Below, piece by piece: positions 4,901 through 63,395 of a DNA stretch of 64,000 bases. The notes beneath the pieces were generated by a model, which was not told where the DNA came from, did not search any database, and saw only the letters and a program-made list of their open reading frames with translations. Origin of the DNA: Diadema antillarum. Lineage: Eukaryota. Position 1 is the stretch's first letter. Every line of letters starts with the position of its first letter. Where the stretch lies: NCBI RefSeq assembly GCF_040938485.1, contig NW_027270890.1, positions 2,976,001 through 3,040,000 on the forward strand, written 5' to 3'. The position numbers and the translations under genes were made by a program.

Positions 4901-4907
<7 letters not shown>

Positions 4908-9887: not shown

Positions 9888-10102
9888 TACTGTACGAGCT
9901 GAAATTTTCACGTACAGATATTTTCGCGAATTGCCACTTGGAGGACATCTTCGCTTGTTGTTAATTTCGCGGTTGCAAGGGTCTATCTGAACTTAGTTAT
10001 TCGCGCGTTATTATTTTCATGTGTTGTTATTTTCGCGGTTCAAAGACGATTCGCGAAATTCGCGAAAATAAAACCACCACAAAAATTTCAGCTCATGCAG
10101 TA
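9888..10102. mobile_element. TACTGT-terminal MITE (TA target, Tc1/mariner-like by inference)
   Basis: TACTGTACGAGCTGAAATTTT..AAAATTTCAGCTCATGCAGTA; CGCG-rich interior. Confidence 0.75.
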
Positions 10103-10765: not shown

Positions 10766-10903
10766 GTTGGACTGTGACATAAATGCTGCCCTCTACAGGT
10801 CCGGCCACACACATGTAGGCTCCTGTGTCCGTTTCCTGCAGGTTGCTGATCACAAGACGTGTCTCACCCAGGGACGGACTCTCCACCCGAATCCTACCAA
10901 AGT
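10766..10903 (-). CDS. Exon Ig14 C-half (last exon recognised; has a GTGAGT donor, so the gene continues)
   Basis: 138 nt, phase 1-1, not in ORF track: FGRIRVESPSLGETRLVISNLQETDTGAYMCVAGPVEGSIYVTVQ. Confidence 0.92.
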
Positions 10904-13900
10904 CTGGAATGCAAACAAATCAACCAGTTACAACCAAACAAATACACATACATAGACTCCGAAGCACACAAGCTGGGCATCAAAAGCTTACAAATGCTGT
11001 AATGTCACATCCTTTTCTTATCATTTGTATGGATTATTTTAAAGGCAGCCGATCGTCATCCCTTATGGTACGTAAACTCTGAACGACCGAAGTTTGTGCA
11101 TGCAATTGCGCAATGCCAGACTCGGTGCTATATCCATAAACGTGTGGGACAATGCTACCACTGAGACACGTGTGTGTGTGTGCGTGTGTGTGTACGCATC
11201 ATACACAAACATTGTCATCGCGAGCTGCGGTGATTGGAGGAGAGAAGCCAGGAGACGCGTGGCTCTTTTGGCCTCTCTTCATGCGCATGCGCATTGAGAG
11301 TGTGCGTCCATTTGGAAGCTCTCGTGGCTCGCTCGGACAGCCATTTTGGGTTAGAAGATTTGTAGCACAGAGCTCTTGTAGTCTAGAGTGTTGTTCGCTG
11401 ACCCATTGAGCCAGCGCTATTCTCATTCGGGGGTCACTACATTTGATACAGAATGGGGGAGGCAGCGTGTTGCGTTCGTCTCCGTGCCGCACAAACCACT
11501 CGCCACGATTGAGTGCCTTTAATTCAGAAATCCATCTCATAAATGAAATGTAACAATGCAGAACAAGCATTAAACAGGATAGCATATCTTGTAAAATGAA
11601 GACACAACACAAATCGGTAAACCAACCTAGTGTGGGCCAAACTGTGAAAACACAAATAGACAGTTTCTCTACATTCAGTGCATATGAAACCTTCAAAAAA
11701 ATATATTGAGATCTTTCTCATAAGGAACAGCAGTATCCTGAAGAATTGAATTACATGCATAGCTACATTTGTATACGACACAGAAAAGGATGCTACATAA
11801 ATTTTTACCCTTTGGCAAGAAGAAGAAGAAGAAGAAGAAGAAGAAGAAGAAGAAGAAGAAGAAGAAGAAGAAGAAGAAGAAGAAGAAGAAGAAGAAGAAG
11901 AAACGAAACCAACAATCTAATAATTATCAATTTATCTCTGTCTTTTGATCCATGGTAGCCTACTAAACAAAAGTTGGTCAAACACCATGCCATACTGAAA
12001 CTGCACAACAGCTTGTAAAACATGAGAATCCATAACAACAGTTTGCAAGGGTGGTCAACCTTCAACAATGAACACAAATGTGACCCGCTACAACAAAAGG
12101 ATCCTAAAGTCGCTGACAGGCGAGCCAATCATGGCCAAGAAAAACGCTATTTTCAGGCCTTTCCTTTGATCATTTAGCTTCGAAATTTCGGCATATGATA
12201 GAAGATGCATTAGACTACAAAATTATGTTAAAAATAGAAATCCAAATGTTTTGACAGATTTTGGTGATATGACTTCAAACTCGATTTTCTCGGCTCACCC
12301 GTCAGCGACTTTAGGATCCTTTTGTTGTAGCGGGTCACAAACTCAAATAGCAGTGGTAGAATAGATGCAGCAAGAAATTCTTAATGGTATCCTCTTTCAT
12401 TTCTTGTCCTTACCATACGAGATGTTCTCCCCAGCAGCATTCCTCCAGATCGGTGGTTCCACAAGGTTGGTGTCGTTCACAGAGCACAGGTAGCTGATGG
12501 TGCCTCCGATCCGCGGCTCAGAGTCGTGGCTGGGCACGATGTTAATACTGACCGGAAGGACGCCCTCGCAATGACTGCCCGTATAACCCGCCGGGCAGCG
12601 ACACTCGCCCTCCATACAGATTCCTCCGTTGATGCACATGGGAAAGCAACCTTCATCACAGTAGTTTGGTTTGAAGAAAAATGAAGGGGAAAACAATAGA
12701 TGGTATTAACTCATCACTGCATCATATCGATGCTCATATGCAGATATACAGATTTGGAAAAACATTCTCAGAGCTGCCAACTTTTGTAAAAGCCTTTCAG
12801 TACTTTGATGGCTGAAAATCAGTAATTTGCACCTTTTTTGAGTGAAAATCAGTAATCCTTAACAGTATAATAGAATTTATCACAGACAATGATTTCTAAA
12901 ATCAGTAATTTGCTTGTAACCTTCAGTATTCTTGTCCAATTTCAGTAGAAATTACTGAAAATCAGTACTAGTTGGCAGCTCTGCATTCTTAGGTTTGTAA
13001 TAAGGCACTGACTCTTGAGAAAGCACACTGAATATGTAGAGTTGAAAGCCATACCCATATTTCAACTACTATTTGTAATTTTTAGAGAAAAAAAAAGTGA
13101 TACAAAACAACTTCAAATTTGATTCAAACTTTGAACTGGCTGTGCCATGCAAAATATACCAATCATCAGATTGATTTTACATACTTATTTTTGATAAATG
13201 CTCGCTTACTTTTTTCTTTGATAAAGTCCTTTATAGAAGTAGACATGAAAATATTATATCATAAAGACAGAATATAAACTGCATATTACGTCAATTTCTT
13301 GACAAGATACAACATAATTTAACCCACTGAAGGCAAATCCCGAGAATACTTGGGCAGGTGTCTATGAGAACTACATACATCTTATCCCTACTAGTTGCTT
13401 TTTTCAAACTCCACTATATAAACTTTTCATTTTATAAATGATTTGGGAAATCAGGTGACTTCAAAAATATGTGCAAGCAATGATGGTGTAAAGCCTTCTT
13501 AGGGATGACAAAATGACTGACTTTGCCAACAGTCTGAACATAGAAAAAGTTGTTCTACAGACATAACATCTTATTGCTTGTTTATCAATGTTTCCACAAA
13601 ATTGCTCCTTCTTACTTTTCAGAGCTCCTTGTAAAATATGAGCCTATGAGAGTTCTTAGGTCATCAAGGGAGGATCTATATGTGATACCCTCCATTTCAA
13701 CAAGCTACTATGGCAAACGTAGTTTCAGGCATGCCGCCCCAGAACTGTGGAACAGCATCCCAAGTGATATAAAACATGCGAGTTCCATCAATAAGTTAAA
13801 AACGTTTTTAAAAACGTATCTGTTCAGAAAGCAACATAGTGATTGTAGATGATGATTTATGCAGCATTTTATTGTTTCTGTAATTACCTTTTCCTGGTTA

Positions 13901-16900
13901 TCTCTTTGTTTCCCCTCTAAAGCGCATAGAGACCTTTCCAAAGGTATTACGCGCTATATAAGAACGGTAATAATAATAATAATAATAATAATAAAAATAA
14001 GGCCTGGAATTGGTGCATCTCTTACCTCTGAGTTCACAGTGTCCCCCAATGAATCCATCCACACACTCACACACACCGTTGTTACAGGTCCCTCCATTAG
14101 CACAGGGTGGCTCACAGGAACGTTCTGAGTTAAAACAATGCATGTTATATGCATGTTATAGTGTACGCTGTAAATACTGTGCAACATACATATTATATTG
14201 ACCTCCTAATCAATCCCTTTGCATCGTGATATGTACAATGTTTGTACCTTGTTAAGAGATTTACTGCATCATATGTTATATTGACCTCTAAATCAATCAA
14301 TACATTGTTAAGATCTGTATTGTTCAACATATAATTATGTTATATTGACCTCCTAATCTACCACTTTGCCTCTTGACTTTGTTGACAACCGAGACTAAAA
14401 GGCTAAAAGATTTTTCCTCAAGAGGACAGGAAGATTTTGTTTTCCTTGAAGGAAATGACTCTTCCAAGAAAGAAAAGCAGAAATAAAAATCAACATCAAA
14501 ATGATAAAGGTAGCATACACGGCACTGTGTCCTTATTTCTCTGTATTGTTGATTTGCATTATTGTACATCTCTTTTCCCAATGATATCACTACATTGATT
14601 TTATTGGTAGGACAACAAAATCACAACACCTACTGTAAAAGAGGAAATTTTTGCAGTGTGGAAATTTTCGTGCCTTTTGTGAAACCAGAATCTAGTGCGA
14701 AAATAAAAGCACATGAATATGTTTGCTTGCCATATGTTCCAGAAGTGGATGTCTTGATTCCGCAGAATTAAAAACATGTGAAACTCTTCTTACCTGGCCG
14801 AGCGCGAAAAATTAGTCGTGCGAAAATATCCACTTTTATAGCATGCTAAAAAAGAGAGGGTGAATTCAGATGAATTTAATACTAAGAAAGTCTTTGGTTC
14901 TCATGCCACACACCTGCAAGTACAATAGTGAAGGTGGTGGTCAGGGGTCCACCGTTGCAGCGGTAGACACCTATGTCCTCTGATGTAAAGTTGTGAATGA
15001 TGAGCTTGGTTTCATGGCTGGTCAGTCTCTGGGTGTAGATGCGGTCATCTCGGTCTGACAAAAAAAAAAGAAGAAGAAATAATGGACTGACTTCAACTAC
15101 ATTTTGTACACAGATAATTTGTCACGTCGAAAATAAGAATGGTAATATCAAACTCATGTCAACAATGTTCTCATAATCACTGCACTTTTGTGCATCAAAT
15201 GCAACCTATCATCATGTTGGATGATGCAGAAAATGGAAAACAGCTATTCTTGTGTATGAGTCTATACCTAGTGTATGTGCATTTTTTATGCAAAATAAAA
15301 AGAACACTCTCAAATATTGCAACTGATTGACAAATTGCCCTACATCGACGTAAATAAGCACTGAATTGATCAGTGTTTTAGTAGTAGCCATGATAAAAAA
15401 TCATGGGCGTACATACTCGAGCAGGATTCGAACCTACGACCTCCTGATCACCGGACAAGCGTTATCTCCACTATAAGGATTAAAACCAACGCTTCCTTTC
15501 AGGCGAAAGCTCGGTGGTCTAGTGGAGATGACGCCTGTCCGGTGATCAGGAGGTCGTAGGTTCGAATCCTGCTCGAGTATGTACGCCCATGATTTTTTAT
15601 CATGGCTACTACTAAAACACTGATCAATTCAGTGCTTATTTACGTCGATGTAGGGCAATTTGTCAATCAGTTGCAATGAAAACATCTCGACGGAAGAAAT
15701 TCATGAATTTGAATAACTCTCAAATATGTCTGAACTGCAGCAAGAGATCAATGAGTGAAATTAATCCTTCATTTATAAAAGTGAACTATAAACACATCTT
15801 GATAAAACAAAGAAAAATTACAGTATGACAGACAGATAAAATAAAGAAAATGTAGTGCAGCATATAAAAAAAGCTAAAAATAAAGAATCAAAATCCAGAA
15901 ACTCACAAGCGGGATTGGAAGAAATGATTCTGCCGGATGGATTTCTCCAGAAGGGGTAGCGAGGGGCGTTAGGTCCACTGGTTCGGCAGAGGAACTCGAT
16001 GTCCTCACCAACCATTGGACTCTTCTCGATACTTGGTATGATGACGATGGAAGACCGGATCCCAACTAATAAAAAAACAAATAATTAAAGGGTGTGTACA
16101 ATTCTGGTCGAGGTGAGGATTTAGCTTTTAACGTTTTGAGAGATATTCAGAAACCATTCTATGAGATGTCAAAGAGCATGCAATTCTAAGGGGTATCAAA
16201 AGTTTATTTGATGAAAATCGGTTTTGAAATGGCTGAGATATCCAAAAACAAGGTGAAACAAAGAGATCCTAATAAAAGGCGTGGCCTGTCGCCTTTTATT
16301 ATTATCACTTTTTTGGATATCTCAGCCATTTAGAAACCAATTTTCATCAAATAAACGTTGAAACTTTCTTAAAATTGCATGCTCTTTCATATTTCATAAG
16401 AGGTTTCTCATTATATCACTTAGGAATGTTCAAAACATGAATCCCCACCTCAACCAGTACTGTACAGTCCCTTTAAAAATTGCAATCACTGTACTTGACA
16501 AAATAGAGAAAGATATCGGCATACGTGCAAATGAGCAAACTCATCTACACAAATACCAAAGATATGTACACATAATTATATCAAAAATCAGTTCTGCCTT
16601 TAAAAACACTATATTCCATAAACATCTACAACTTCTTCACATTTTGATGTCTTTATTCAAGCTTTGATTATCAATACAGAAATCTTTCTTAGAAGCCTCC
16701 ATAATAAGAAAACTTTTTTTTTCCCGTTTTAACTGATATGCAAACTATATCAATTCTGGATGATATTGAATCAGATCTTTTTCTTAGTTTCCCATCTTTA
16801 CCAGGTCAGTACTGTATAGATATAAAAAATAATATGTCGTACAGGAGAATAATCAGAAAAGGAACCAAACTCTTAATTGAACAATTTTATTGGATTACAG

Positions 16901-24259: not shown

Positions 24260-24306
<47 letters not shown>

Positions 24307-57300: not shown

Positions 57301-60300
57301 TCAATGCAGGTTCCTCCATTCTCACAGGCGGGGGTGCACTCCAACTCTGAAGGAGGGACAGGCACAGATGTTAAACTAGCTCATTATACTAACTTGTTGA
57401 TTCTCTTCCAAACACACTTTACAGCCATGCTTAAACTGTACATTTTGTACATGTACTTCTTTCAATGTACAACAACAGAATGTGCTCGCCATCTGTAGCA
57501 CACTCTGACTCATAAGGGATAAAAGATTACAGAGAAATTTTGTTTCTACAACAGTAAAAATTCATGTCTCGAAATACTGTTATTTAAATCGATGGTGCAT
57601 CATTCCCTTTGGTTACAATAAAGTTTCAATATGGCGAAAGAAAACTACCAGTCCCAAAGACTTTGCTAGTGGGAGTCTCCTGTATTATTCAACATGAATA
57701 GAATACCTCATAGCACTAAATAAAACATATTTTTGTATGTGTTTTACTTCCATATCTGTGGCAGTGAGCAAAGGGCGGGAGAATGGTTAATATGTTTCTT
57801 ACCTGCGAACTCAACATTGATGTACTCCACGTCGGGACCTCCGGTGCAGTAGTAGATTCCGAGGTCGTCGCTCTGCAGATCGGTGATCACCAGCTCGGAG
57901 CTCATGTCATTCACTACATCGACGTACATGCCTTGGGAGATTAAAAATGGATTATGAATGGGGAGTTATTATCATTAGTAATGACAATAACATCTTTCTT
58001 TTTAACTGTAACTTTTCCCCTGGCAGCACTACCATTCTAGAGCCATTGGTATGACAGCTGTACTGCAACTCTACCAATTTATACCAGGATCAAAGAGAAT
58101 ATGGGGGGTAAAACATTTTGCCCACCAGCCATAACTCCACAAGAGAGTATCAACTTTTTGAGTCACATCTGCACTGTATTATGCCCTATGTTGTGGTGAT
58201 CATGGTTTAACATTGACTGTTGATAATAATCATACATTGTAGTTATATCATGATTCAAAATGGAGTACTTGTCACTTTAGCTAAGAGCTCAATGATGATA
58301 ATAAATTGTTATCATAATGTCATAATAACAGAAATAATAACAGAAATAATAAGTACAACAACAATGAGATTACGTACCAACTAAAGAATGACACTGGGAA
58401 AAAAGGAAAGGAATACACAATGTAAATTCAAAAATAAAATCTATTTCAACAAAAGTGGTTCCTGATGCCAGATTACCACGTATACCAACATCATGCACTA
58501 TGTTCATACAAATTACAAAGTGTAGCACTATGTTCCATCTTTTGCAGACAATCCCTAATGAAAGTACTGTTAACTTCGAAAATTCAAAGTCTGATATACA
58601 TACCTCCTTGTTGGGCAGGATCGATGAGCTGGCCATTGCGGAACCATTGAGGGCGCTGCACAAAGTGGTCTCCTTGCTTGACGTTGCAGCGATACCTGAC
58701 CGTGGTCCCAGGGTTGGGAAGCTGGCCCAAGTCGGTACTAATTGACACATAGCCATCAGCTGGAATACAGATAACACAGAAAAAGTGATGTCATAAATAA
58801 AGTTTTATCGCAAACTGAGCTAAATGAATTCTTCTTAAGTTGAGATATTTGTGATTAAAGCTGCAAAAAAACAAGGAAAACAATAAGAAAATACAAGATA
58901 TATCTAATAATAACTTCAAGAACATTCCTTGTTATGTTACAAGTGAGGTATTACTGGAAAGGTAAAATTTTGCGCTATCTGATGATGGACTTACTTTGAA
59001 ATGTTTAAAAATGGCGCTTAGACCATTTTGCGATAAAAATCTTCAAGGTCCTAGGTCTTCTAGGTTCCTTTACTCTATAACAATTGTTACTTGCAATCAT
59101 TTCAAGAAACTTTAGCCACAGCTATAAGCAACAGACAGTCAGCTAGTCTAGTACTTCTAGTCGGCTGCAGCAAGCCACAATGCACCAACTCATCAGGCTT
59201 GCACTCAGCTTTTCCTGAGGTTGAGTCTCTAATGACATAGGAATTAATAAGTTATGTTTCTCTCACAGATGGAATGGGACAGGAGCTCATTTCTATAGGA
59301 TAGATAACCACAGATAGCAAAGAAAAAGTGATGTCTACACAGAAAAAGTGACATATATCCTATCTACACATTTTGCCTATTACAGAGGGGATGGTATAAT
59401 AACTTTATTGCCCAGCTCCTTTCAATGGGTCTAGAATCTGAGACTATCCGATAGCATAGCAGACATGATATTGATTTCATCTAATCATTGCCATAGACAG
59501 TTAGTTCTGAATGAAGATAATACGTTGTTGCCATTGTAATTAATCAGTAGTTGCGGATCCACAAGAAATCTGACCTGGAACTTTGCACTCTGACCCGACC
59601 CAGTCCGCCGTACACTGGCACTCTCCGTTCACACAGGTTCCATTGTTTCGACAAACTGGTACACAGTCTGGTTCTGTGTGGAATAGATAGGCATGGAAAA
59701 AAGGGGAAAATTGATCTCTTTTCTGGATATAAATGTCCTTTCAATGAAAAAACTTCTGCATAATTATGATTACCATACAGACATCAAAAATATTTCAGTC
59801 TGGATCAATGCTTGCCATTACAGCATACGGCAATAACATGTATTATGCTCCATGAATCAATGCAGCACTCTGCAGCTGTATGGGTATGTTTACATCTCTT
59901 TCTAATATCAAAATAAAACCAGATTTTTGGCCTTTTTCCATTAAGCCTACCAAGTACTTATTGGTCCTTCACAATGAATAACTTTCCTGCATGCTTGTCA
60001 AGTTGAAAGGGGTTACCTTTTTACTGTGAAAATTAATGAAATGAAATGAAATATTTTTTAATGTGGAGTAGAGTATATTACTATTGTAGTATCTGCAATA
60101 TAAAAATCTAATTATCCATATACTATAATATCATTATGTACAATGCAGACAAAAGCATGACTGTGTAAACACCCCTCCCCCTGCCCTACCCTATTTCTAA
60201 CGATATTCGAAGAGTAGGTCTGATATCGGAAATGATGGCCATGTATGTTTGGTTTTAATCTAATTTTACCTTCTCCTGCAACAAGCACCATGACAGTGGT

Positions 60301-63298
60301 CTGGACAGGCCCAACCATACAGGTGAACATTCCAGAGTTATATGGCTGGACATTGAACATGACCAGTTCGGTGGTCAGCAGGGAGGGGCGTCTGGTGCCC
60401 ACTGCTTCATCCAAGGTTCCTATGGAGATAGAGAGGATGAGGTTTCAAACAGACAACAAGAGATAAATAATAGACAGATACCTTCTGGTACAAACGAAGG
60501 AAAGACCTGGGCACCATGTCATGAAAGTTGTCAGCCCCGACAAGTTGTCTGTCTCTGACAATCACCATATTAACAGTCAGTGACCAAAGCTTCTCAGCCA
60601 ATCAAAACCAAGGATTTTCCTGAAATTTTCAGAGACTGACAACTTGTCAGGGCTGACAACTTTCATGAAACAGTGCCCTCATCAACAGAAAGTGAGAGAT
60701 AACTATATAATAGACAGAAATGTTCTCATACATACAGTGGAAAGAACTGGTGAACAGAGATTGTGAGAAACCTTAGACAGAAATGTTCTTGTACAAAGAT
60801 GTATGTATACAAAAAAACAAAACAAAACATTGCACAGAAATAGAGAGACAAATAATAGACAGAAATTTACTCACACATAAGTGTACAGCAAGAAAACTTT
60901 TAAAAGAGAGAAAAGGATATATAATAGACAGACATTTACTCTTAAGACATTCAGGAAAGACATATCAGCAGATACTCAGAGAGAAAAAAAAAATCAAATG
61001 ATTATATAACATAACCATTTTGCACACATCATGTGGTGTACATAACTGACAAGATACTTTCCTTTGTTTTCCATAAAACATATCACAAAATTGTGGCAAA
61101 ATTATGATCAAAGGGAAAAACAATATAATGACAAGTGACTTTCATACCCAGTGAGACTCTATTCCCAGTATTATCCATCCAGACTGGGATCCCGTATGTT
61201 TCATCACTGGCATTGCAGGTCAAGTGAAGGTCATCGCCGGCCATTAGGATGACGCTGTCCGGACCACCGATGGTCAGACTGACCGCTAGAGGAGAGAACA
61301 CACAGGGATTAAAGGAAAATGGTTTGAGGTTCCCATTTCTTTGAATGCATGATGTTTTTTATGAATATTTCCTTTGTGTTATGTTAGATTTTATTTCTAC
61401 ATGCACATACAGATAGTCCGAGGGGGCGGGGATTTCGTTGCATATCTTGCATTTTTTTATGTCTACCATATAAACCTTAATATACAAGAACTACTGTATA
61501 AACAGCAGCAGCTGTTATTTCGCGTACAGATATTTTCGCAAATGGGGAGGTCATGGACTTTTTTGTGAGACTCTGTTTTAGCGATTTGATTCTGAGCCTT
61601 ATCGTAAAGAGCATGCACTATTAGTCCAGCATATGGCGACATTTTCGCATGTTGTTAAATTTGTGGTCCAACAGTGATTCACGAAATTTGCAAAAATAAC
61701 ATCTTATACAGTACATACACTTGAAGAGTTTGTTCGCAAAAACCGATAAGTCCATATTTGCCAAATGGAGATATTTGCGATTAAAGGTCAAGAAAAACAA
61801 AGAGAATAATAAGAAAATTTTAGCTTCCTGTGACCATACAGTGTAACTTAAAAAATGTACCTTTATATGAAGTGACCAATATATGTGACAGTGCACCTCA
61901 AAACGAACATAAAGTCGCACGCACTGATTTTGCGTGAGGACTGAAAATAAGTGAAATGGGTCAACCTAGCCGAACTTGACTTTTTCATATTTTCTGAAAG
62001 AGCGGGTCTTCTTTTACATTATACTAAAATTTGGTATCATAAAACGGGCAGGAAAGTATTTTTTTTTAGCAGTTTATCTCAACTTTTTTGGTAGAATAGT
62101 GTGATTAGATGTGCCTTTAGAATCCCCTTTTCATTTCTGAAAAACCTTGTCCACACTCTTCACTTTCAACTCTAATAACTTTTGGAAGGATAGTGCTACT
62201 GCTTTGAGAGTTGGCATTAATTATGGACAGAATGTGTTAATGAGGCACGCTTAATTTCAGTTTAATCTGATAATCCCTTCATTGTTGTTACCCTGGTTGT
62301 TTACTTCCTGTTTTTTGTCCCATTCATCGCACAGCCAGCACGGTTTTGTAAAGATTAAGCGCTTGAATAGACACTGTACTTCAGAGCCTCTTTTCTCAGT
62401 TCACACTTTTCCTGAGTTTGTGCTTTCTTTCCAATATTTAGATAGGTTAGGAGAGTCCATTTGACTTGAGTTATACATCATTTTAAAGCTTAAAGTCTGC
62501 TCTTTTAGAATATGGTCTTAACCCAAAATTCATGTCTGGCGACTTTTTGTTTGTTTTGAGGTGCAGGGTCACATATCATTTAAAAGGTATTATTTTGTGC
62601 TTTATGACAGAGACCGTATTTCAAAATCTTCAAAAATGGACTTATCGGTTTTTGCAAACAAACTCTTCACTTGACACACCAAGTCTTGAAGGAATTTAGC
62701 TGTGAAAATTGTTGTCTCATCATCATCTAAATGGCAACCCTCCATTGCACTGCTACAGGTATCTCATGTTGAAAAAGATTACATGGAACTTGATAAATAC
62801 ATCAGGGCCCTCTTTTATGAAGAGTTAAAATTGATTATAAAGTTGATTTCAACTGTAAGTCTATGGCAGCCTTTGTGGCAAGGAAATTTAAAATCAATTT
62901 TATCTTTTGATACAACGGGGCCCTTACAAAATAATACCAATCTGATACACAATATTAATCTAGATTTTTTGTAATGCATTGCCAATTTAAGGATCAATAC
63001 TGAATTGACCCATTTAGGGCCTTTTTGATAATTCTTCAACAAAAGAAAGTGTGTAATTCATATGAAAGAGGAGTTCTTATGCTATATCCTTAAGAAATAC
63101 TATCACTGATTGGTAAAAATGACAATAAACAGATTAAACATAACGAGAATATGGGATGCGATTGGTTAACCTTTGACCTTTGATCCTTACCAGGAATTTG
63201 GCAGATATCTCCACTGAATCCCTCTGGACAGGTGCAGACTCCAAGCACACACTGACCTCCATTCATACACTCTGGTTCACACTGCAGTGGTAGCGCTT
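10766..63298 (-). CDS. Span of a large multi-exon EGF/Ig repeat protein gene (43 exons seen; 17 EGF-like + 14 Ig); 5' and 3' ends not identified
   Basis: 43 GT-AG-bounded exons, all phase 1-1 and multiples of 3, join into 1940 stop-free codons. All EGFs have 6 Cys. All 14 Ig have B-strand Cys, C-strand Trp and F-strand Cys. Confidence 0.92.
11043..11518. mobile_element. TTAA-flanked non-autonomous DNA transposon (AGG termini, Kolobok-like by inference)
   Basis: TTAA|AGGCAGCCGATCGT..ACGATTGAGTGCCT|TTAA; GC-rich island within an AT-rich intron. Confidence 0.6.
11817..11902. repeat. (AAG)n microsatellite, ~28 units
   Basis: Uninterrupted trinucleotide run. Confidence 0.97.
12080..12338. mobile_element. 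GTGAC-terminal MITE, 259 bp
   Basis: ~40-bp TIR GTGACCCGCTACAACAAAAGGATCCTAAAGTCGCTGAC; flanks AAAT/AAAC. Confidence 0.85.
12414..12650 (-). CDS. Fused exon EGF17 + Ig14 N-half
   Basis: 237 nt, phase 1-1 (acceptor less certain): CFPMCINGGICMEGECRCPAGYTGSHCEGVLPVSINIVPSHDSEPRIGGTISYLCSVNDTNLVEPPIWRNAAGENISY. Confidence 0.86.
12769..12983. mobile_element. MITE with CAGAGCTGCCAAC TIRs and 6-bp TSD
   Basis: CATTCT|CAGAGCTGCCAAC..GTTGGCAGCTCTG|CATTCT; internal repeated GAAAATCAGTA motifs. Confidence 0.8.
13545..13993 (+). mobile_element. 5'-truncated L2/Crack-like LINE 3' end
   Basis: ORF2 C-terminus ILLLVYQCFHKIAPSYFSELL..RVLRSS..YGKRSFRHAAPELWNSIP..FLKTYLF; 3' UTR AAGCGC..GCGCTATATAAGA; (TAA)n tail; antisense to the host gene. 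Confidence 0.85.
14026..14124 (-). CDS. Exon EGF16
   Basis: 99 nt, phase 1-1: RSCEPPCANGGTCNNGVCECVDGFIGGHCELR. Confidence 0.93.
14631..14843. mobile_element. TACTGT-terminal MITE
   Basis: Collinear with 19409-19614 (same orientation). Confidence 0.75.
14914..15054 (-). CDS. Exon Ig13 C-half
   Basis: 141 nt, phase 1-1, not in ORF track: RDDRIYTQRLTSHETKLIIHNFTSEDIGVYRCNGGPLTTTFTIVLA. Confidence 0.91.
15316..15677. mobile_element. Fold-back element: 158-bp inverted arms (2 mismatches) around a 46-bp spacer, carrying a tRNA-like sequence
   Basis: Arms 15316-15473 and 15520-15677 are reverse complements. Confidence 0.9.
15509..15579 (+). other. tRNA-derived Pol III promoter-like head (not a canonical tRNA)
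   Basis: A-box TGGTCTAGTGG, B-box GGTTCGAATCC, intact T-arm GTAGG-TTCGAAT-CCTGC, partial acceptor stem; non-canonical anticodon arm. Confidence 0.65.
15907..16065 (-). CDS. Exon Ig13 N-half
   Basis: 159 nt, phase 1-1: GIRSSIVIIPSIEKSPMVGEDIEFLCRTSGPNAPRYPFWRNPSGRIISSNPA. Confidence 0.91.
16089..16472. mobile_element. TTAA-flanked fold-back MITE (AGGG termini, Kolobok-like by inference)
   Basis: TTAA|AGGG..CCCT|TTAA with long imperfect internal palindrome; lies ~20 nt upstream of the Ig13-N acceptor. Confidence 0.75.
17060..17158 (-). CDS. Exon EGF15
   Basis: 99 nt, phase 1-1: RPCPLNCANGGTCEDGVCLCPTGYQGSFCQIG. Confidence 0.93.
17614..17861. mobile_element. ~248-bp GAAGAG MITE (subfamily 2)
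   Basis: ATTT|GAAGAGTTT..AAACTCTTC|ATTT, perfect 4-bp TSD; inverted relative to 4992 and 7820. Confidence 0.85.
18030..18167 (-). CDS. Exon Ig12 C-half
   Basis: 138 nt, phase 1-1: EDRVFTFDVNATATRLYIRPLAEGDTGLYTCATGPLNSTVFITIE. Confidence 0.92.
18980..19141. mobile_element. PIF/Harbinger-like MITE
   Basis: ~40-bp TIR GGCACTGTTTCATGAAAGTTGTCAGCCCTGACAAGTTGT; flanks CTG/CAG; second copy 60510-60677. Confidence 0.85.
19164..19322 (-). CDS. Exon Ig12 N-half
   Basis: 159 nt, phase 1-1: IQPMSISILPEEGQVFYTGENIAFLCLTQGTFAPQNPKWREPSGRIVGNRQT. Confidence 0.92.
19409..19614. mobile_element. TACTGT-terminal MITE
   Basis: TACTGTAA..TTACAGTA; homolog of 14631-14843. Confidence 0.75.
19944..20042 (-). 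CDS. Exon EGF14
   Basis: 99 nt, phase 1-1: PSCIPECENGGECVGGECRCPTGFNGSACELQ. Confidence 0.93.
21346..21447 (-). CDS. Exon EGF13
   Basis: 102 nt, phase 1-1, not in ORF track: AYSCIPRCVNGGQCIEGICVCSEGFLGEACDRI. Confidence 0.92.
21820..21966 (-). CDS. Exon Ig11 C-half
   Basis: 147 nt, phase 1-1: ESNHIFTTRKSGFTTELQITNVSFADSGTYACNAGPLQQSISVTIHNT. Confidence 0.92.
22544..22702 (-). CDS. Exon Ig11 N-half
   Basis: 159 nt, phase 1-1: SIDANLRIELDPDNEYTEGGNVTFRCITSGPDAPMNPRWRKGDFQYINSAVF. Confidence 0.91.
22727..22921. other. Assembly gap (195 N)
   Basis: Run of N starting 24 nt upstream of the Ig11-N acceptor. Confidence 0.99.
23487..23591 (-). CDS. Exon EGF12
   Basis: 105 nt, phase 1-1: PGCHSQRPCYNGGTCMGGRCFCQVDFTGDLCQFT. 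Confidence 0.93.
24261..24302. repeat. (CT)n microsatellite
   Basis: Directly visible. Confidence 0.95.
24806..25574. mobile_element. TACTGTATACGC-type MITE interrupted near its end by a second MITE
   Basis: Outer parts collinear with the uninterrupted inverted copy at 56435-56660. Confidence 0.8.
25032..25558. mobile_element. Nested 527-bp TACTGTAAACGT-terminal MITE
   Basis: TACTGTAAACGT..ACGTTTACAGTA inside the 24806 element at a TA-rich site. Confidence 0.8.
26461..26599. repeat. Imperfect palindrome (~62-bp arms) with GAC-GAA-GTC apex; core of a probable larger repeat element
   Basis: GGAACAT-ACCAAATGTTCCACCC..GTCCC / GGGAC..GGGTGGAACGTTTGGTACATGTTCC. Confidence 0.8.
27281..27379 (-). 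CDS. Exon EGF11
   Basis: 99 nt, phase 1-1: SRCTPPCLNGGVCRGGQCECPETHMGRDCSQQ. Confidence 0.92.
28560..28574 (-). CDS. Candidate 15-nt linker microexon between Ig10 and EGF11
   Basis: gtctctgtgtgtgttactcttctaaag|GC CAA GAT TCT GAA G|gtaata; phase 1-1, (G)QDSE. Confidence 0.4.
29348..29485 (-). CDS. Exon Ig10 C-half
   Basis: 138 nt, phase 1-1: GSDSVHVEFEMQNSTRLHLDSITPNQAGIYICNAGPVAAVYNVSL. Confidence 0.92.
29545..29704. mobile_element. TACTGT-terminal MITE
   Basis: TACTGTAAAAC..GTTTTGCAGTA; partial relative at ~44096-44210. Confidence 0.7.
29888..30050. mobile_element. Small DNA element with GGCGGATCCAG TIRs (hAT-like by inference)
   Basis: CAAGGGCGGATCCAG..CTGGATCCGCCACTG; no clear TSD. Confidence 0.6.
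30490..30728. repeat. Degenerate ~28-29-bp minisatellite, ~8 units
   Basis: Unit GGGACTAAGTAATGACTAAGACTA(T/G)GCT. Confidence 0.85.
30754..30912 (-). CDS. Exon Ig10 N-half
   Basis: 159 nt, phase 1-1: EDDFEVVFTPSSDVRPSPGEGFNIRCEVQGPILLERPMWTGPLGQEIAPAGR. Confidence 0.92.
30953..31408. repeat. ~64-bp minisatellite, ~7 units
   Basis: GACTCTTATC recurs at 31018, 31082, 31147, 31211, 31275 and 31344. Confidence 0.9.
31664..31762 (-). CDS. Exon EGF10
   Basis: 99 nt, phase 1-1: PRCLPTCQNGGDCVEGVCQCSPEYTGSHCQYS. Confidence 0.93.
32431..32574 (-). CDS. Exon Ig9 C-half
   Basis: 144 nt, phase 1-1: VNIAGLLVQRVSLTKSRLVIQDITEDDTGIYTCAAEPKRETIILNIY. Confidence 0.9.
32596..32815. repeat. 55-bp tandem repeat, 4 near-identical units
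   Basis: AACATAATGACACCGATTAATACACAAGAATACACAGAGACAGAACACTATACAT x4. Confidence 0.95.
34187..34875. mobile_element. 689-bp GTGAC-terminal non-autonomous DNA transposon
   Basis: ATAT|GTGACCCTGCACCTCAAAAC..GTTTTGAGGTGCACGGTCAC|ATAT; closely similar inverted copy at 61885-62572. Confidence 0.9.
36226..36394. mobile_element. PIF/Harbinger-like hairpin MITE
   Basis: ~65-bp near-perfect arms TGTTTCATAAAGCTGTTCGTAAAGTTACGAAC..; flanks CTG/CGG. Confidence 0.85.
36531..36563 (-). CDS. Candidate 33-nt microexon inside Ig9
   Basis: Pyrimidine tract + tgtag|AA GAC CCC TTT GTG GAA GAA TTC TCA TTC TCA G|gtaaca; phase 1-1, (E)DPFVEEFSFS. Confidence 0.6.
37237..37493. mobile_element. TA-flanked MITE abutting the donor of microexon 37501-37533
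   Basis: Inverted GCTGGGG(T/C)GACAAGACCTCGTATCT cores near each end; TA at 37235-36 and 37494-95. Confidence 0.7.
37501..37533 (-). CDS. Candidate 33-nt microexon inside Ig9
   Basis: catag|AC TCA GAG CTG GCG AAT TCA TTT AGC TCC TCA G|gtaatt; phase 1-1, (D)SELANSFSSS; 272-nt AG-free zone upstream. Confidence 0.5.
39422..39577 (-). CDS. Exon Ig9 N-half
   Basis: 156 nt, phase 1-1: FIPYNVTITPDQELTPSVGDSVSFLCESTGPEAPTPVWYDPNGRVISPSRA. Confidence 0.92.
39633..39725. mobile_element. ~90-bp piggyBac-like mini-element
   Basis: TTAA|CCCATTGAGGA..TCCTCAACGGG|TTAA; relatives at 43099-43191, 46528-46620, 52490-52653, 54607-54696 and degenerate ones at ~13320 and ~23195-23375. Confidence 0.8.
40817..40915 (-). 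CDS. Exon EGF9
   Basis: 99 nt, phase 1-1: [32 protein letters not shown]. Confidence 0.93.
41085..41331. mobile_element. ~248-bp GAAGAG MITE (subfamily 1)
   Basis: AAAT|GAAGAGTTTGTTCGCAAAAACCGATAAGTCCAT..ATGGACTTATCGGTTTTTGCAAACAAACTCTTC|AAAT. Confidence 0.9.
41905..42048 (-). CDS. Exon Ig8 C-half
   Basis: 144 nt, phase 1-1: PSPPPVHAVSVSPLVTRLVIDSVSQDLAGDLACTAGPLTSLYTLNIP. Confidence 0.9.
42468..42632. mobile_element. PIF/Harbinger-like MITE with 3-bp CAG TSD
   Basis: CAG|GGATCCATTTCAT..ATGAAATGGGGCC|CAG; the empty site is preserved in the adjacent duplicated segment. Confidence 0.85.
42674..42943 (-). CDS. Fused exon EGF8 + Ig8 N-half (no intron between them)
   Basis: 270 nt, phase 1-1: GECENPCTNGGTCDNGACLCPLGFAGRTCEVPVGPDGILVNITITSSLDHDPQIGEGVSFLCELSPNPLYTNPQWHGPTGQVVPVVDAL. 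Confidence 0.9.
   Translation of the reverse strand: MENVRTPALMEEPVITEPAFVRLALPAALARCPSVRTVSWSTSPSRRRLTTTRRLGRGSVSCVSSVPTRCTPTHNGTAPLDRSYPSSML
43099..43191. mobile_element. ~90-bp piggyBac-like mini-element
   Basis: TTAACCC..GGGTTAA; homolog of 39633. Confidence 0.78.
43781..43918 (-). CDS. Exon Ig7 C-half
   Basis: 138 nt, phase 1-1: GTRHLNTRVTRRTNRLTISKLTVEDAGQYTCQVGPIISSFDIIPR. Confidence 0.92.
45022..45180 (-). CDS. Exon Ig7 N-half
   Basis: 159 nt, phase 1-1: TENYQLRIRVQRNPEFLLDEVTKILCEIRGNNNQENPVWRGPNGQVIRPAGR. Confidence 0.9.
45685..45783 (-). CDS. Exon EGF7
   Basis: 99 nt, phase 1-1: QECTVPCANGGTCVEGTCQCVGDFVGGFCQNI. Confidence 0.92.
46330..46467 (-). CDS. Exon Ig6 C-half
   Basis: 138 nt, phase 1-1: GQRIFSDVQSNTETALTITSAESGDAGRYSCVVGMNRADYLLSVS. 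Confidence 0.91.
46528..46620. mobile_element. ~90-bp piggyBac-like mini-element
   Basis: TTAACCCATTGAGGA..GGGTTAA. Confidence 0.78.
47327..47479 (-). CDS. Exon Ig6 N-half
   Basis: 153 nt, phase 1-1: RRPFSIEIQGPPRETPEIGDDLTLICRVSRSGEGIPTWLGPDNQPIAGIQ. Confidence 0.9.
48259..49412. mobile_element. 1154-bp non-autonomous piggyBac-like element
   Basis: TTAA|CTCTTAATGTGCCA..TGGCACGTTAAGAG|TTAA; subterminal GGCGACCATGGCACGT repeats; no transposase frame recognised. Confidence 0.8.
49582..49680 (-). CDS. Exon EGF6
   Basis: 99 nt, phase 1-1: [32 protein letters not shown]. Confidence 0.93.
50429..50569 (-). CDS. Exon Ig5 C-half
   Basis: 141 nt, phase 1-1: GTSHFTSEVIDRKATRLVINDLQVMDSGPYVCNVGPVTTQFDIQVQ. 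Confidence 0.92.
51123..51263 (-). CDS. Exon Ig5 N-half
   Basis: 141 nt, phase 1-1: FVVSINQTLPSLPRTGDSVSFICEVDPSSPYDNPIWYDPYGVPVSQ. Confidence 0.92.
51371..51655 (-). mobile_element. tRNA-derived SINE with a Deu/Nin-like central domain (by recollection of the motif)
   Basis: A-box TAGCACAATCGG, B-box GGTTCAATTC, central GTCCCTAGGATAGGACATTAACTGGAGGTCC; 3' end approximate. Confidence 0.75.
52135..52233 (-). CDS. Exon EGF5
   Basis: 99 nt, phase 1-1: IPCERPCFYGGRCVNGACECQEGFVGEQCETP. Confidence 0.92.
52490..52653. mobile_element. Two nested/overlapping copies of the ~90-bp piggyBac-like mini-element
   Basis: TTAACCCATTGAGGATG followed by a second TTAACCAGTTGAGGATG..CCTCAATGGGTTA and an outer GGGTTAA. 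Confidence 0.7.
52704..52844 (-). CDS. Exon Ig4 C-half
   Basis: 141 nt, phase 1-1, not in ORF track: GNSHVHMEPLTPYATRLFINDLRLTDAGMYVCKVGPVEKRFTVLAE. Confidence 0.92.
53351..53503 (-). CDS. Exon Ig4 N-half
   Basis: 153 nt, phase 1-1: NSFILVTEPEGQVPIVGQNQSFVCEVSRENPYGIPVWLDREGAIIESLNE. Confidence 0.92.
54158..54232. repeat. (CTACGT/CTACTT)n hexamer microsatellite
   Basis: Directly visible. Confidence 0.93.
54357..54452 (-). CDS. Exon EGF4
   Basis: 96 nt, phase 1-1: PACYPPCINGVCTDGRCECPVGLTGIQCNMP. Confidence 0.93.
54769..55018. mobile_element. ~248-bp GAAGAG MITE (subfamily 1), inverted relative to 41085 and 61723
   Basis: ACTT|GAAGAG..CTCTTC|ACTT. Confidence 0.9.
55259..55524 (-). mobile_element. 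tRNA-derived SINE
   Basis: A-box TGGCTCAGTGAG, B-box GGGTTCAAACCC, body GTCATACCAAAAGACGTTAAAA, (ATT)n tail. Confidence 0.82.
55586..55726 (-). CDS. Exon Ig3 C-half
   Basis: 141 nt, phase 1-1: RRSSPFTEDITPFATQLHFVDAHFHDTGTYTCRVGPFSKLFNITFA. Confidence 0.92.
56435..56660. mobile_element. TACTGT-terminal MITE
   Basis: TACTGTAAACGCCA..TGGCGTATACAGTA; ~11 nt from the Ig3-N donor; homolog of 24806. Confidence 0.85.
56672..56824 (-). CDS. Exon Ig3 N-half
   Basis: 153 nt, phase 1-1: SDFIVIGEPIGQVPEVMGNATFLCEVPESSSYGSPRWLDPAGQEISAVNL. Confidence 0.92.
   Translation of the reverse strand, partial: RQISLSSESRLDKSLKSWVMPPSCVRSQRAAPMGHPAGWTLLDRRSQLSI
57248..57346 (-). CDS. Exon EGF3
   Basis: 99 nt, phase 1-1: LECTPACENGGTCIEGECLCNEGYTGETCSEQ. 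Confidence 0.93.
57803..57931 (-). CDS. Exon Ig2 C-half
   Basis: 129 nt, phase 1-1: MYVDVVNDMSSELVITDLQSDDLGIYYCTGGPDVEYINVEFA. Confidence 0.92.
58604..58759 (-). CDS. Exon Ig2 N-half
   Basis: 156 nt, phase 1-1: DGYVSISTDLGQLPNPGTTVRYRCNVKQGDHFVQRPQWFRNGQLIDPAQQG. Confidence 0.9.
58798..59044. mobile_element. ~248-bp GAAGAG MITE (subfamily 2, degenerate ends)
   Basis: Collinear with 17614-17861. Confidence 0.75.
59575..59673 (-). CDS. Exon EGF2
   Basis: 99 nt, phase 1-1: PDCVPVCRNNGTCVNGECQCTADWVGSECKVP. Confidence 0.92.
60270..60419 (-). CDS. Exon Ig1 C-half
   Basis: 150 nt, phase 1-1: TLDEAVGTRRPSLLTTELVMFNVQPYNSGMFTCMVGPVQTTVMVLVAGE. Confidence 0.9.
60510..60677. mobile_element. PIF/Harbinger-like MITE
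   Basis: Same TIR as 18980-19141. Confidence 0.83.
61148..61285 (-). CDS. Exon Ig1 N-half
   Basis: 138 nt, phase 1-1: VSLTIGGPDSVILMAGDDLHLTCNASDETYGIPVWMDNTGNRVSL. Confidence 0.92.
61492..61713. mobile_element. TACTGT-terminal MITE
   Basis: TACTGTATAA..TTATACAGTA. Confidence 0.65.
61723..62668. mobile_element. GAAGAG MITE (subfamily 1) split by a nested 688-bp element
   Basis: ACTT TSD; the two halves rejoin to match 41085-41331. Confidence 0.9.
61885..62572. mobile_element. 688-bp GTGAC-terminal element nested in the GAAGAG MITE
   Basis: ATAT|GTGACAGTGCACCTCAAAAC..GTTTTGAGGTGCAGGGTCAC|ATAT; the empty site in the 41085 copy has a single ATAT. Confidence 0.9.
63191..63298 (-). CDS. Exon EGF1
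   Basis: 108 nt, AG/GT, phase 1-1: ALPLQCEPECMNGGQCVLGVCTCPEGFSGDICQIP. Confidence 0.93.
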
Positions 63299-63395
63299 CT
63301 TCAAGTACAACAACAGAAATAGGATAGCTTCTGATACCTCTTTGACTCAAATAAAAATGTGTAATTCAAATAAGAGTTCTTTAATACATGTATAT

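What the first reader, a model, noticed from the sequence alone, without database searches (positions are those of the whole stretch)
10766..63298. Giant EGF/Ig array built entirely of frame-neutral (phase 1-1) cassettes
Seen: 43 exons, each a multiple of 3 and each flanked by phase-1 GT-AG introns, give 1940 stop-free codons with 17 six-Cys EGF-like and 14 Ig domains in near-strict alternation. Established: Tie receptors, neuregulin and Vein combine Ig and EGF but with few domains. I do not recognise a named family with a long alternating EGF-Ig rod. Inference: this may be an uncharacterised adhesion, receptor or matrix protein whose length and domain content can be re-specified by exon skipping without frame loss. 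Caveat: phase-1 flanks are normal for EGF and Ig modules, so symmetry alone does not prove alternative splicing.
Basis: partly seen in the sequence, partly recalled or inferred. Interest (0 to 1): 0.8.

Follow-up and report, generated by a model that had tools for sequence, protein, structure and literature searches.

The report
Slice of a giant urchin matrix gene
The window holds about a quarter of a roughly 7,900-residue secreted protein gene found only in echinoderms, built of alternating EGF and Ig domains and never described in a paper I could find; the exon pattern is real, but using it for large-scale alternative splicing is only weakly supported.

Summary
On the minus strand, 43 exons (63298 to 10766) are all multiples of 3 and all AG..GT phase 1-1. 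They give 1,939 stop-free codons with 17 EGF and 14 Ig domains. Each Ig is split over two exons, and two exons fuse an EGF to the first Ig half. The N gap lies inside an intron, and the junction across it is collinear with orthologues.

The window is a Diadema-like sea urchin. Its exons are under strong purifying selection against D. antillarum (dN/dS 0.04).

This is not a whole gene. It matches residues 4416-6360 of the 7,937-aa Acanthaster planci LOC110982993 (41% identity, identical domain string). It also matches residues 2354-4268 of Lytechinus variegatus LOC121420611 (69%).

Full-length relatives read: signal peptide, cbEGF array, about 40 EGF-Ig units, 13 VWC, VWD, TIL. None has a membrane segment. 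Databases call them "uncharacterized" or mislabel them notch-like, fibropellin-like or perlecan-like. A hemichordate counterpart lacks the Ig domains.

The most likely reading is a giant secreted matrix protein with a kielin/chordin-like C-terminus.

Exon skipping is plausible only for single EGF exons and a 33-nt microexon, and the evidence is predicted isoforms and gene models of relatives. No RNA run was listed for this genome.

The parts
63191..63298 (-). exon 1, EGF1 (phase-1 acceptor, so the gene continues upstream of the window)
61148..61285 (-). exon 2, Ig1 N-half
60270..60419 (-). exon 3, Ig1 C-half
59575..59673 (-). exon 4, EGF2
58604..58759 (-). exon 5, Ig2 N-half
57803..57931 (-). 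exon 6, Ig2 C-half
57248..57346 (-). exon 7, EGF3
56672..56824 (-). exon 8, Ig3 N-half
55586..55726 (-). exon 9, Ig3 C-half
54357..54452 (-). exon 10, EGF4
53351..53503 (-). exon 11, Ig4 N-half
52704..52844 (-). exon 12, Ig4 C-half
52135..52233 (-). exon 13, EGF5
51123..51263 (-). exon 14, Ig5 N-half
50429..50569 (-). exon 15, Ig5 C-half
49582..49680 (-). exon 16, EGF6
47327..47479 (-). exon 17, Ig6 N-half
46330..46467 (-). exon 18, Ig6 C-half
45685..45783 (-). exon 19, EGF7
45022..45180 (-). exon 20, Ig7 N-half
43781..43918 (-). exon 21, Ig7 C-half
42674..42943 (-). exon 22, EGF8 fused to Ig8 N-half (intron lost; also fused in D. antillarum)
41905..42048 (-). exon 23, Ig8 C-half
40817..40915 (-). 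exon 24, EGF9
39422..39577 (-). exon 25, Ig9 N-half
37501..37533 (-). candidate 33-nt phase 1-1 microexon in the mid-Ig9 intron (DSELANSFSSS); not part of the 43-exon model
   Evidence: unproven
36531..36563 (-). candidate 33-nt phase 1-1 microexon in the mid-Ig9 intron (EDPFVEEFSFS). It is the candidate most like the 11-aa insert EEAFTETIESS that the L. variegatus orthologue carries at this junction
   Evidence: unproven
32431..32574 (-). exon 26, Ig9 C-half (follows a 6.8-kb intron)
31664..31762 (-). exon 27, EGF10
30754..30912 (-). exon 28, Ig10 N-half
29348..29485 (-). exon 29, Ig10 C-half
27281..27379 (-). exon 30, EGF11 (first of an EGF-EGF pair). Its orthologue is exactly absent from the L. 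variegatus gene model and present in A. planci
23487..23591 (-). exon 31, EGF12
22727..22921 (.). assembly gap (195 N) inside intron 31, starting 24 nt upstream of exon 32; no frame crosses it
22544..22702 (-). exon 32, Ig11 N-half
21820..21966 (-). exon 33, Ig11 C-half
21346..21447 (-). exon 34, EGF13
19944..20042 (-). exon 35, EGF14
19164..19322 (-). exon 36, Ig12 N-half
18030..18167 (-). exon 37, Ig12 C-half
17060..17158 (-). exon 38, EGF15
15907..16065 (-). exon 39, Ig13 N-half
14914..15054 (-). exon 40, Ig13 C-half
14026..14124 (-). exon 41, EGF16
12414..12650 (-). exon 42, EGF17 fused to Ig14 N-half
10766..10903 (-). exon 43, Ig14 C-half (phase-1 donor, so the gene continues; the next exons are not in window 1-10765)

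Best explanation
Shown: the 43 exons are an internal slice of one very large gene of a Diadema-like sea urchin. The slice corresponds to residues about 4416-6360 of about 7,900 in the starfish orthologue. Each EGF is one 99-nt phase 1-1 exon, and each I-set-type Ig is two phase 1-1 exons.

Shown in relatives, but lying outside this window: the whole protein reads signal peptide, about 13 calcium-binding EGFs, a run of tenascin/teneurin-type EGFs, about 40 EGF-Ig units, a few more EGFs, about 13 VWC repeats, one VWD(-C8)-TIL assembly, then the end. There is no membrane anchor.

Inferred history: the uniform intron phase is mainly a record of how the array was built. Blocks of symmetric exons can only be duplicated in tandem if they keep the frame. 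This happened before sea urchins and starfish split. The units are now only 26-45% alike, and their order has barely changed since.

Inferred function: a secreted, long, multi-domain matrix protein. The EGF-Ig segment acts as an extended spacer or adhesive scaffold. The C-terminal kielin/chordin-like VWC array, of a type that binds BMP-family ligands in other proteins, together with the VWF/mucin-like D assembly, of a type that drives multimerisation or autocleavage, provides signalling or assembly functions.

Inferred splicing: most likely constitutive for most exons, with occasional skipping of single EGF exons and possible use of a 33-nt microexon inside Ig9.
For: - Gene model and domain calls.
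- Synteny with D. antillarum at 82-94% DNA identity. All 22 comparable exons keep AG/GT, with no indel and no stop; dN/dS 0.041, dS 0.154.
- The array continues upstream in D. antillarum (both loci are on the same strand of one contig).
- Collinear matches: A. planci P0167 4416-6360, 41% identity over 1,958 columns with 36 gaps and an identical domain string. L. variegatus P0300 2354-4268, 69%. S. purpuratus XP_011681392, 74% over the last 627 residues.
- Unit-by-unit best hits fall in order: 14 of 14 Ig against L. variegatus, 10 of 14 against A. planci.
- Architecture of full-length relatives from Pfam. The D assembly matches FCGBP, VWF and mucins.
- No hydrophobic segment except N-terminal signal-like ones.
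- The same three-exon phase-1 unit is seen in a sea cucumber locus.
- AlphaFold model of three units: mean pLDDT 84.9, with Ig folds closest to titin, NCAM and contactin I-set domains.
- Cassette differences in relatives.
Against: - No transcript or protein evidence for this genome; no RNA run was listed.
- The N- and C-terminal parts are not in the window, so the architecture of this species' protein is inferred from orthologues.
- NCBI annotates the D. antillarum and L. pictus loci as several short genes rather than one.
- P0003, P0007 and P0008 of D. antillarum lie on another contig, so a second locus or haplotig exists and the one-gene picture is not fully settled.
- The function rests on domain types only. 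No relative has been studied.
- The model's pTM of 0.41 says nothing reliable about a rigid rod.
Confidence: 0.8

Rival explanations
1. The phase 1-1 exons are used as a programmable cassette system. Many EGF and Ig units are skipped in tissue-specific combinations, giving a large family of isoforms of different length.
For: - All 43 exons are frame-neutral.
- A. planci X1 and X2 differ by two single EGF cassettes.
- The L. variegatus model lacks exactly the exon-30 orthologue and has an 11-aa insert at the exon 25|26 junction.
- Ptychodera flava has 25 or more predicted isoforms differing by 34-aa EGF cassettes.
Against: - All of this evidence is gene prediction in other species.
- The hemichordate cassettes are near-identical repeats, where read mapping is ambiguous.
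- Only EGF exons vary, never Ig exons. An Ig needs both of its exons.
- dN/dS is 0.04 on every compared exon, and the domain order is frozen since the urchin-starfish split. Both fit constitutive use of most units.
- Intron flanks are no more conserved than intron middles (low power).
Confidence: 0.15
2. The splicing is entirely constitutive. The symmetric phases are only a relic of exon-block duplication, and the isoform differences in relatives are annotation artefacts or real exon gains and losses in those genomes.
For: - Phase 1-1 is the usual class for EGF and Ig modules (established knowledge of exon shuffling).
- Strong purifying selection on all exons.
- Only two predicted isoforms in the best-annotated full-length orthologue.
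Against: - The two A. planci isoforms differ by clean single-exon EGF cassettes at two separate places.
- The 11-aa insert in L. variegatus coincides with 33-nt AG..GT candidates in this window's intron.
Confidence: 0.4
3. It is a tandem cluster of several smaller EGF-Ig genes, as annotated in D. antillarum and L. pictus, not one giant gene.
For: NCBI models of 406-536 aa in D. antillarum and 811-2,689 aa in L. pictus.
Against: - No start codon context, signal peptide, stop or non-phase-1 boundary occurs anywhere in 52 kb.
- The fragment models map to successive segments of the single 7,937-aa starfish protein and the 5,229-aa L. variegatus model.
- The short models begin in mid-domain.
Confidence: 0.04
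4. It is a cell-surface receptor or adhesion molecule of the Tie, Notch or IgCAM type.
For: Ig plus EGF occurs in Tie receptors. Database names say 'notch homolog'.
Against: - No membrane segment, FN3, kinase, LNR or ankyrin domain appears in any full-length relative.
- The C-terminus is VWC x13, VWD, TIL.
- The names are automatic labels driven by EGF content.
Confidence: 0.03

Closest known systems
Acanthaster planci LOC110982993 (XP_022097518/9), Lytechinus variegatus LOC121420611 (XP_041471207), Anneissia japonica LOC117117126, Antedon mediterranea XP_071959435: predicted, uncharacterised
   Same: Orthologues or close family members. They share the same EGF-Ig unit and the same tenascin-type EGF (C-x3-C-x5-C-x4-C-x-C-x8-C). 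They share the Ig signature Y-x-C-x-x-G-P (12 of 14 units here). The window is collinear with the first two.
   Different: Nothing essential, but the window shows only about a quarter of the protein. None of these has been studied, and their names carry no functional information.
Kielin/chordin-like protein (KCP), BMPER/crossveinless-2
   Same: The C-terminal part of the full-length relatives is a run of VWC repeats followed by VWD and TIL. NCBI names several isoforms of the hemichordate homologue 'kielin/chordin-like protein'.
   Different: As far as I know, KCP and BMPER have no EGF-Ig array and are several times smaller. That part of the gene lies outside this window. BMP binding is untested.
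Ptychodera flava 'fibrillin-2-like / kielin/chordin-like protein' (XP_070548446 and 25 or more isoforms)
   Same: cbEGF array, long tenascin-type EGF array, VWC x10, VWD, TIL. Its C-terminal 1,600 residues are 40% identical to the starfish protein.
   Different: It has no Ig domains at all. The Ig exon pairs therefore look like an echinoderm addition, or a hemichordate loss.
NCAM / perlecan domain IV type Ig (I-set) domains
   Same: I-set-like fold. As I recall, those Ig domains are also each encoded by two exons, and the NCAM VASE microexon sits inside an Ig domain, like the 33-nt candidates here.
   Different: Those proteins carry Ig domains in tandem, not interleaved with EGF. Sequence similarity is marginal (E 0.004-0.008). 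The exon-structure comparison was not tested here.
Tie1/Tie2, neuregulin, Vein
   Same: They combine Ig and EGF domains.
   Different: They have few domains and no alternation. Tie has FN3, a membrane segment and a kinase. None of those features is present in the full-length relatives.
Tenascins / teneurins
   Same: Same EGF subtype. Pfam's best hits are EGF_TEN, EGF_Teneurin and EGF_2.
   Different: Their EGFs are contiguous and are followed by FN3/fibrinogen or YD-repeat parts, with no Ig between them.

Membership tests
Echinoderm giant EGF-Ig-VWC-VWD protein (unnamed; LOC110982993 / LOC121420611 group) | Repeated unit of one tenascin-type EGF plus one I-set Ig carrying Y-x-C-x-x-G-P | tested here: met
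   17 EGF and 14 Ig in the window. GP follows the F-strand Cys in 12 of 14 Ig. The same HMMs tile the relatives.
Echinoderm giant EGF-Ig-VWC-VWD protein (unnamed; LOC110982993 / LOC121420611 group) | Collinear, unit-by-unit orthology with a full-length member | tested here: met
   41% identity over 1,958 columns to P0167 4416-6360, with an identical domain string. 69% to P0300 2354-4268. Ig best hits in order: 14/14 and 10/14.
Echinoderm giant EGF-Ig-VWC-VWD protein (unnamed; LOC110982993 / LOC121420611 group) | N-terminal signal peptide plus cbEGF array, and C-terminal VWC array, VWD and TIL | not testable with these tools
   These parts lie outside the window. No such exon was found in 1-10765 or 63299-64000. 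They are seen only in relatives.
Kielin/chordin-like protein (KCP) / BMPER | Multiple VWC (chordin-type CR) repeats followed by VWD(-C8)-TIL | not testable with these tools
   Met in the orthologues P0167, P0166 and P0300, but that region is not in this window.
Kielin/chordin-like protein (KCP) / BMPER | Binding and modulation of BMP ligands | not tested
   Needs a binding assay.
Notch (the name given to several relatives) | LNR repeats, membrane segment, RAM/ankyrin intracellular domain | tested here: not met
   None of these appears in the Pfam scans or precomputed domain lists of the relatives. No membrane segment.
Tie receptor tyrosine kinases | FN3 repeats, membrane segment, split kinase domain | tested here: not met
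   Absent from full-length relatives.
Hemicentin / fibulin-6 | N-terminal VWA, long tandem Ig run, TSP1, G2F, cbEGF, fibulin C-terminal module | tested here: not met
   Ig domains are interleaved with EGF, not tandem. No VWA, TSP1 or G2F appears in the domain lists of the relatives.
Perlecan (the name given to P0007) | SEA, LDLa, laminin B / laminin EGF, LamG | tested here: not met
   Only EGF and Ig families hit P0007.
Fibropellin (the name given to P0011) | EGF array with a C-terminal avidin-like domain | tested here: inconclusive
   With the window-derived HMMs, P0011 is EEEEEE plus one Ig. No Pfam scan of P0011 itself was run. No avidin family is listed for any relative.
Calcium-binding EGF (cbEGF) | D-x-D/N-E-C consensus at the start of the EGF | tested here: not met
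   0 of 17 EGFs in the window carry it. Pfam's best hits are the non-calcium EGF_2 and teneurin types.

The most novel reading that the evidence does not exclude
An echinoderm-specific protein of about 7,900 residues arose when Ig exon pairs were inserted between the EGF exons of an ancestral ambulacrarian cbEGF-EGF-VWC-VWD (kielin-like) gene. The hemichordate counterpart has no Ig. The resulting array of about 40 units has been held almost unit-for-unit since the urchin-starfish split. Single EGF cassettes and a VASE-like 33-nt microexon inside Ig9 are alternatively spliced to tune the length or binding of a matrix-tethered BMP modulator.
Probability: 0.2. Interest if true: 0.65.

Novelty: new variant of a known kind. 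Interest (0 to 1): 0.45.

Why it matters
Mosaic matrix proteins made of EGF, Ig, VWC and VWD modules are a known kind. This arrangement appears undescribed. It has about 40 strictly interleaved EGF-Ig units, carries a kielin/chordin-like tail, and is confined to echinoderms. It sits in databases only under empty or wrong names such as notch, fibropellin and perlecan.

The finding gives three concrete things:
- A correct reading for a gene that annotation pipelines chop into fragments.
- A clean case of module insertion and amplification, with an Ig-less hemichordate counterpart for comparison.
- A tractable test case for whether symmetric exons in a giant repeat gene are actually used as cassettes.

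If the protein is a matrix-bound BMP modulator or a structural fibre of echinoderm connective tissue, it would bear on echinoderm development and tissue mechanics. That part is inference only.

Tried and rejected
- RNA evidence: the look-up of sequencing runs on window 49500-59499 listed no run, so read laying was not used and splicing could not be observed.
- Literature:
  - No paper holds the locus or accession numbers of the relatives.
  - No paper combined sea urchin, alternating, EGF and immunoglobulin domains.
  - 'The echinoderm adhesome' (Whittaker et al. 2006) is not held.
  - The 2023 review of echinoderm ECM mentions hemicentin but nothing like this protein.
- The Patiria miniata skeletal proteome lists five 'kielin/chordin-like' models (PMC5460417). 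Three of their peptides do not occur in the A. planci protein, best 5 of 10 residues. No link is shown.
- Asterias rubens footprint protein Sfp6 has VWC repeats, but it is 2,602 aa with a Glu-rich disordered region and no EGF-Ig array (PMC9382459). It is not this protein.
- The L. variegatus spine-enriched 'notch homolog protein 2-like' is another locus, LOC121422898 (PMC11574069).
- Intron-flank conservation between the two Diadema genomes, as a mark of regulated exons, was uninformative. Flanks averaged 0.76-0.80 against 0.74 for intron middles, with large indels confounding the comparison.
- A search for decayed extra units or other domain types in the long introns and flanks found none.
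- A sequence search of PDB with three units gave only marginal hits: reelin EGF, LRIG1, NCAM. Foldseek found tandem-Ig proteins but no solved alternating Ig-EGF structure.
- The 7,937-aa protein is too long for the look-up of encoding contigs, so the starfish exon structure was not examined. A sea cucumber locus was used instead.

Full report
OBSERVATION

The window is 37.7% G+C with one N run at 22727-22921. EGF-like six-cysteine patterns occur only on the minus strand. Open stretches with Ig N-half (x-C...W) and Ig C-half (D-x-G-x-Y-x-C) signatures lie between them in regular order.

I took, for each stretch, the in-phase AG and GT sites with the best polypyrimidine and donor context. I corrected seven boundaries by comparison among the repeats. 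This gives 43 exons from 63298 down to 10766. Every exon length is a multiple of 3. Every exon is preceded by AG, followed by GT, and is phase 1-1. Spliced, they give 5,820 nt, 1,939 complete codons, no stop and 130 cysteines.

The chance of no stop in that many random codons is about 4e-41.

HMMs built from the three exon classes find exactly 17 EGF, 14 Ig N-halves and 14 Ig C-halves in the window (E 1e-12 to 1e-22). The best other hit on either strand has E 0.46. There are therefore no decayed extra units in the long introns and no further units in 1-10765 or 63299-64000.

Pfam calls the EGFs EGF_2, EGF and teneurin-type EGF. It places the two Ig exon classes on positions 4-40 and about 44-76 of the Ig_3, I-set and V-set models.

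Each Ig domain is split by a phase-1 intron. Two exons (42674-42943 and 12414-12650) fuse an EGF with the first Ig half.

The units are old. Mean pairwise identity is 45% among EGFs and 26-28% among Ig halves.

THE GAP

The 195 N lie in the intron between exon 31 (23487-23591) and exon 32 (22544-22702), and start 24 nt upstream of exon 32. No reading frame crosses them. The spliced junction ...DLCQFT|LSIDANLRIEL... aligns without any gap to the L. variegatus and A. planci proteins. No constitutive exon is therefore hidden there, although a small optional exon cannot be excluded.

WHOSE GENOME, AND IS THE GENE ALIVE

A phmmer search with the fused exon 22 against 1.84 billion representatives returned about a dozen proteins matched over both the EGF and the Ig half. 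All those with a source name are echinoderm proteins.

One of them, Diadema antillarum XP_071510246 (406 aa), is 96.7% identical to residues 165-554 of the spliced 43-exon product. Its locus is syntenic with the window at 82-94% DNA identity. The window is therefore a related diadematid sea urchin, not D. antillarum itself. Other notes of this scan also call the genome a sea urchin.

For the 22 exons covered by that locus, every AG and GT is kept, and there is no indel and no stop. dS is 0.154 and dN is 0.006, so dN/dS is 0.041. This is a functional gene under strong constraint.

IT IS A SLICE OF A MUCH LARGER GENE

The first exon starts and the last exon ends in phase 1.

In D. antillarum the same kinds of exon continue for at least 7 kb upstream of the exon-1 counterpart. 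They occur again about 75-95 kb further upstream on the same strand of the same contig (one search shows that the tool marks reversed loci, and these two are not marked).

Word-based searches with two long relatives found four giants:
- Acanthaster planci LOC110982993, 7,937 and 7,939 aa.
- Anneissia japonica LOC117117126, 7,859 aa.
- Antedon mediterranea XP_071959435, 6,335 aa.
- Lytechinus variegatus LOC121420611, 5,229 aa, partial.

The spliced 43-exon product aligns end to end with A. planci residues 4416-6360: 41% identity, 1,958 columns, 36 gaps. The starfish domain string over that range is identical to the window's: (EGF-Ig) x10, EGF, EGF-Ig, EGF, EGF-Ig, EGF-Ig, EGF, EGF-Ig. It aligns with L. 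variegatus 2354-4268 at 69-71% identity, and with S. purpuratus XP_011681392 at 74% over the last third.

Unit by unit, each of the 14 Ig domains has its best match at the expected position in L. variegatus (14 of 14). In A. planci 10 of 14 do, and the rest are near ties.

The shorter echinoid models map to successive segments of the starfish protein. These models carry names such as 'notch homolog 2', 'fibropellin-3-like' and 'perlecan-like'. They look like fragments of one gene, not a family of small genes.

In the orthologues the part after the window's last Ig reads EGF x4, Ig, EGF x3, cbEGF, VWC x13, VWD, TIL. None of this is in window 1-10765. That region instead holds a retroelement with a reverse-transcriptase match.

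WHAT THE WHOLE PROTEIN LOOKS LIKE

These features are shown in relatives and inferred for this species:
- An N-terminal signal-like segment in Antedon and in the hemichordate homologue.
- About 13 cEGF/EGF_CA domains.
- A run of tenascin/teneurin-type EGFs.
- About 40 EGF-Ig units.
- About 13 VWC repeats.
- One VWD-TIL assembly whose closest solved relatives are the D assemblies of FCGBP, VWF and mucins.
- No hydrophobic segment fit for a membrane anchor.

The window part itself is acidic (pI 4.5) with 19 N-glycosylation sequons. It has no RGD and no cbEGF consensus. Eight of its 17 EGFs carry a C2-x4-S/T-C3 motif of the O-fucose type.

An AlphaFold model of three units of the D. antillarum orthologue, built from a 57-row alignment, has mean pLDDT 84.9. 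Its Ig domains resemble titin, NCAM and contactin I-set domains. No solved structure with interleaved Ig and EGF came up. The pTM is 0.41, so the relative domain orientation, and hence the 'rod', is not established.

HISTORY OF THE ARRAY

A hemichordate protein has cbEGFs, 36 tenascin-type EGFs, VWC x10, VWD and TIL. This is Ptychodera flava 'fibrillin-2-like / kielin/chordin-like protein', 3,349-3,549 aa. Its C-terminal 1,600 residues are 40% identical to the starfish protein. It has no Ig.

The simplest reading is that Ig exon pairs were inserted between EGF exons and amplified in the echinoderm stem. Loss in hemichordates is the alternative.

The same three-exon unit is seen in a sea cucumber locus: a 99-nt EGF exon, an Ig N-half of about 150 nt, an Ig C-half of about 140 nt, all phase 1. 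The exon design is therefore ancestral at least to echinozoans.

Uniform phase is thus first of all a record of how the array grew. It is not by itself evidence of regulated splicing.

ALTERNATIVE SPLICING

I could not observe it, because no RNA run was listed for this genome.

Indirect evidence in favour:
- The two A. planci RefSeq isoforms differ by exactly two single EGF cassettes. One is 35 aa near residue 1086 and the other is 33 aa near residue 3107. Each lies between two Ig domains.
- The L. variegatus model lacks exactly the orthologue of exon 30 (EGF11, 33 aa), which A. planci has.
- The same model carries an 11-aa insert, EEAFTETIESS, exactly at the exon 25|26 junction, inside Ig9. 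In the window's 6.8-kb intron at that place there are two 33-nt phase 1-1 AG..GT candidates. These are 36531-36563 (EDPFVEEFSFS, the candidate most similar to the insert) and 37501-37533 (DSELANSFSSS). They are the ones another first-stage note pointed to.
- The hemichordate homologue has 25 or more predicted isoforms differing by 34-aa EGF cassettes.

Evidence against, and caveats:
- All of this is gene prediction in other species.
- The hemichordate cassettes are near-identical repeats, which are prone to mapping artefacts.
- Only EGF exons vary, never Ig exons.
- All compared exons are under strong purifying selection.
- The unit order has been frozen for the whole of eleutherozoan history.
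- Intron flanks show no extra conservation (low power).

My estimate is about 0.45 that some EGF exon or the microexon is really alternative in this species. It is about 0.15 that the array is a large-scale cassette system.

VERDICT

The reading 'uncharacterised matrix or adhesion protein with no named family' holds up. It should be sharpened to 'internal quarter of an echinoderm-specific, roughly 7,900-residue secreted protein with a kielin/chordin-like C-terminus'. 'Receptor' is unlikely. 'Length re-specified by exon skipping' remains a hypothesis, with modest support for single EGF exons only.

The architecture is a new variant of a known kind, the mosaic ECM proteins. It is present in databases only as unnamed or misnamed predictions.

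Noticed in passing
window 36531-36563 and 37501-37533 (minus strand): Two 33-nt phase 1-1 AG..GT candidate microexons lie in the 6.8-kb intron that splits Ig9. The L. variegatus orthologue carries an 11-aa insert exactly at that exon junction, and the 36531-36563 candidate is the most similar to it. This supports the separate first-stage note on this place.
   Followed up: partly
window 1-2700 (minus strand): A retroelement lies downstream of exon 43. It has a 498-aa ORF (1107-2600) with no Pfam hit, followed by ORFs with a reverse-transcriptase match (RVT_1, E 6e-23, 3-728) containing a YLDD motif. By eye it looks DIRS-like. It runs off the window end.
   Followed up: partly
window 27281-27379 (exon 30, EGF11): The L. 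variegatus RefSeq model omits exactly this exon's orthologue, while the starfish protein has it. This could be exon skipping, exon loss or an annotation miss.
   Followed up: partly
window 32595-32815, 30955-31410, 30490-30730, 11817-11902: Intronic tandem repeats: a 55-nt unit x4 at 98% identity just upstream of exon 26, 64/129-nt and 28-nt arrays in the introns on either side of exon 28 (Ig10 N-half), and (AAG)28 in the last intron.
   Followed up: no
all 17 EGF exons: Eight EGFs carry C2-x4-S/T-C3, the consensus recalled for O-fucosylation by POFUT1. None has the calcium-binding consensus.
   Followed up: no
L001 and L002 (D. antillarum JBFRCO010001031.1, 732-854 kb): NCBI annotates the orthologous region as several short genes (311, 415, 406 aa and others). 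Same-strand EGF/Ig exons were seen in both fetched stretches (732-764 kb and 827-854 kb); the roughly 63 kb between them was not read. A single gene spanning 120 kb or more is inferred. Three further fragment models (P0003, P0007, P0008) lie on another contig, which may be a haplotig or a second locus.
   Followed up: partly
window 15316-15677: Another first-stage note reports a fold-back element here, in the intron between exons 39 and 40. I did not examine it.
   Followed up: no
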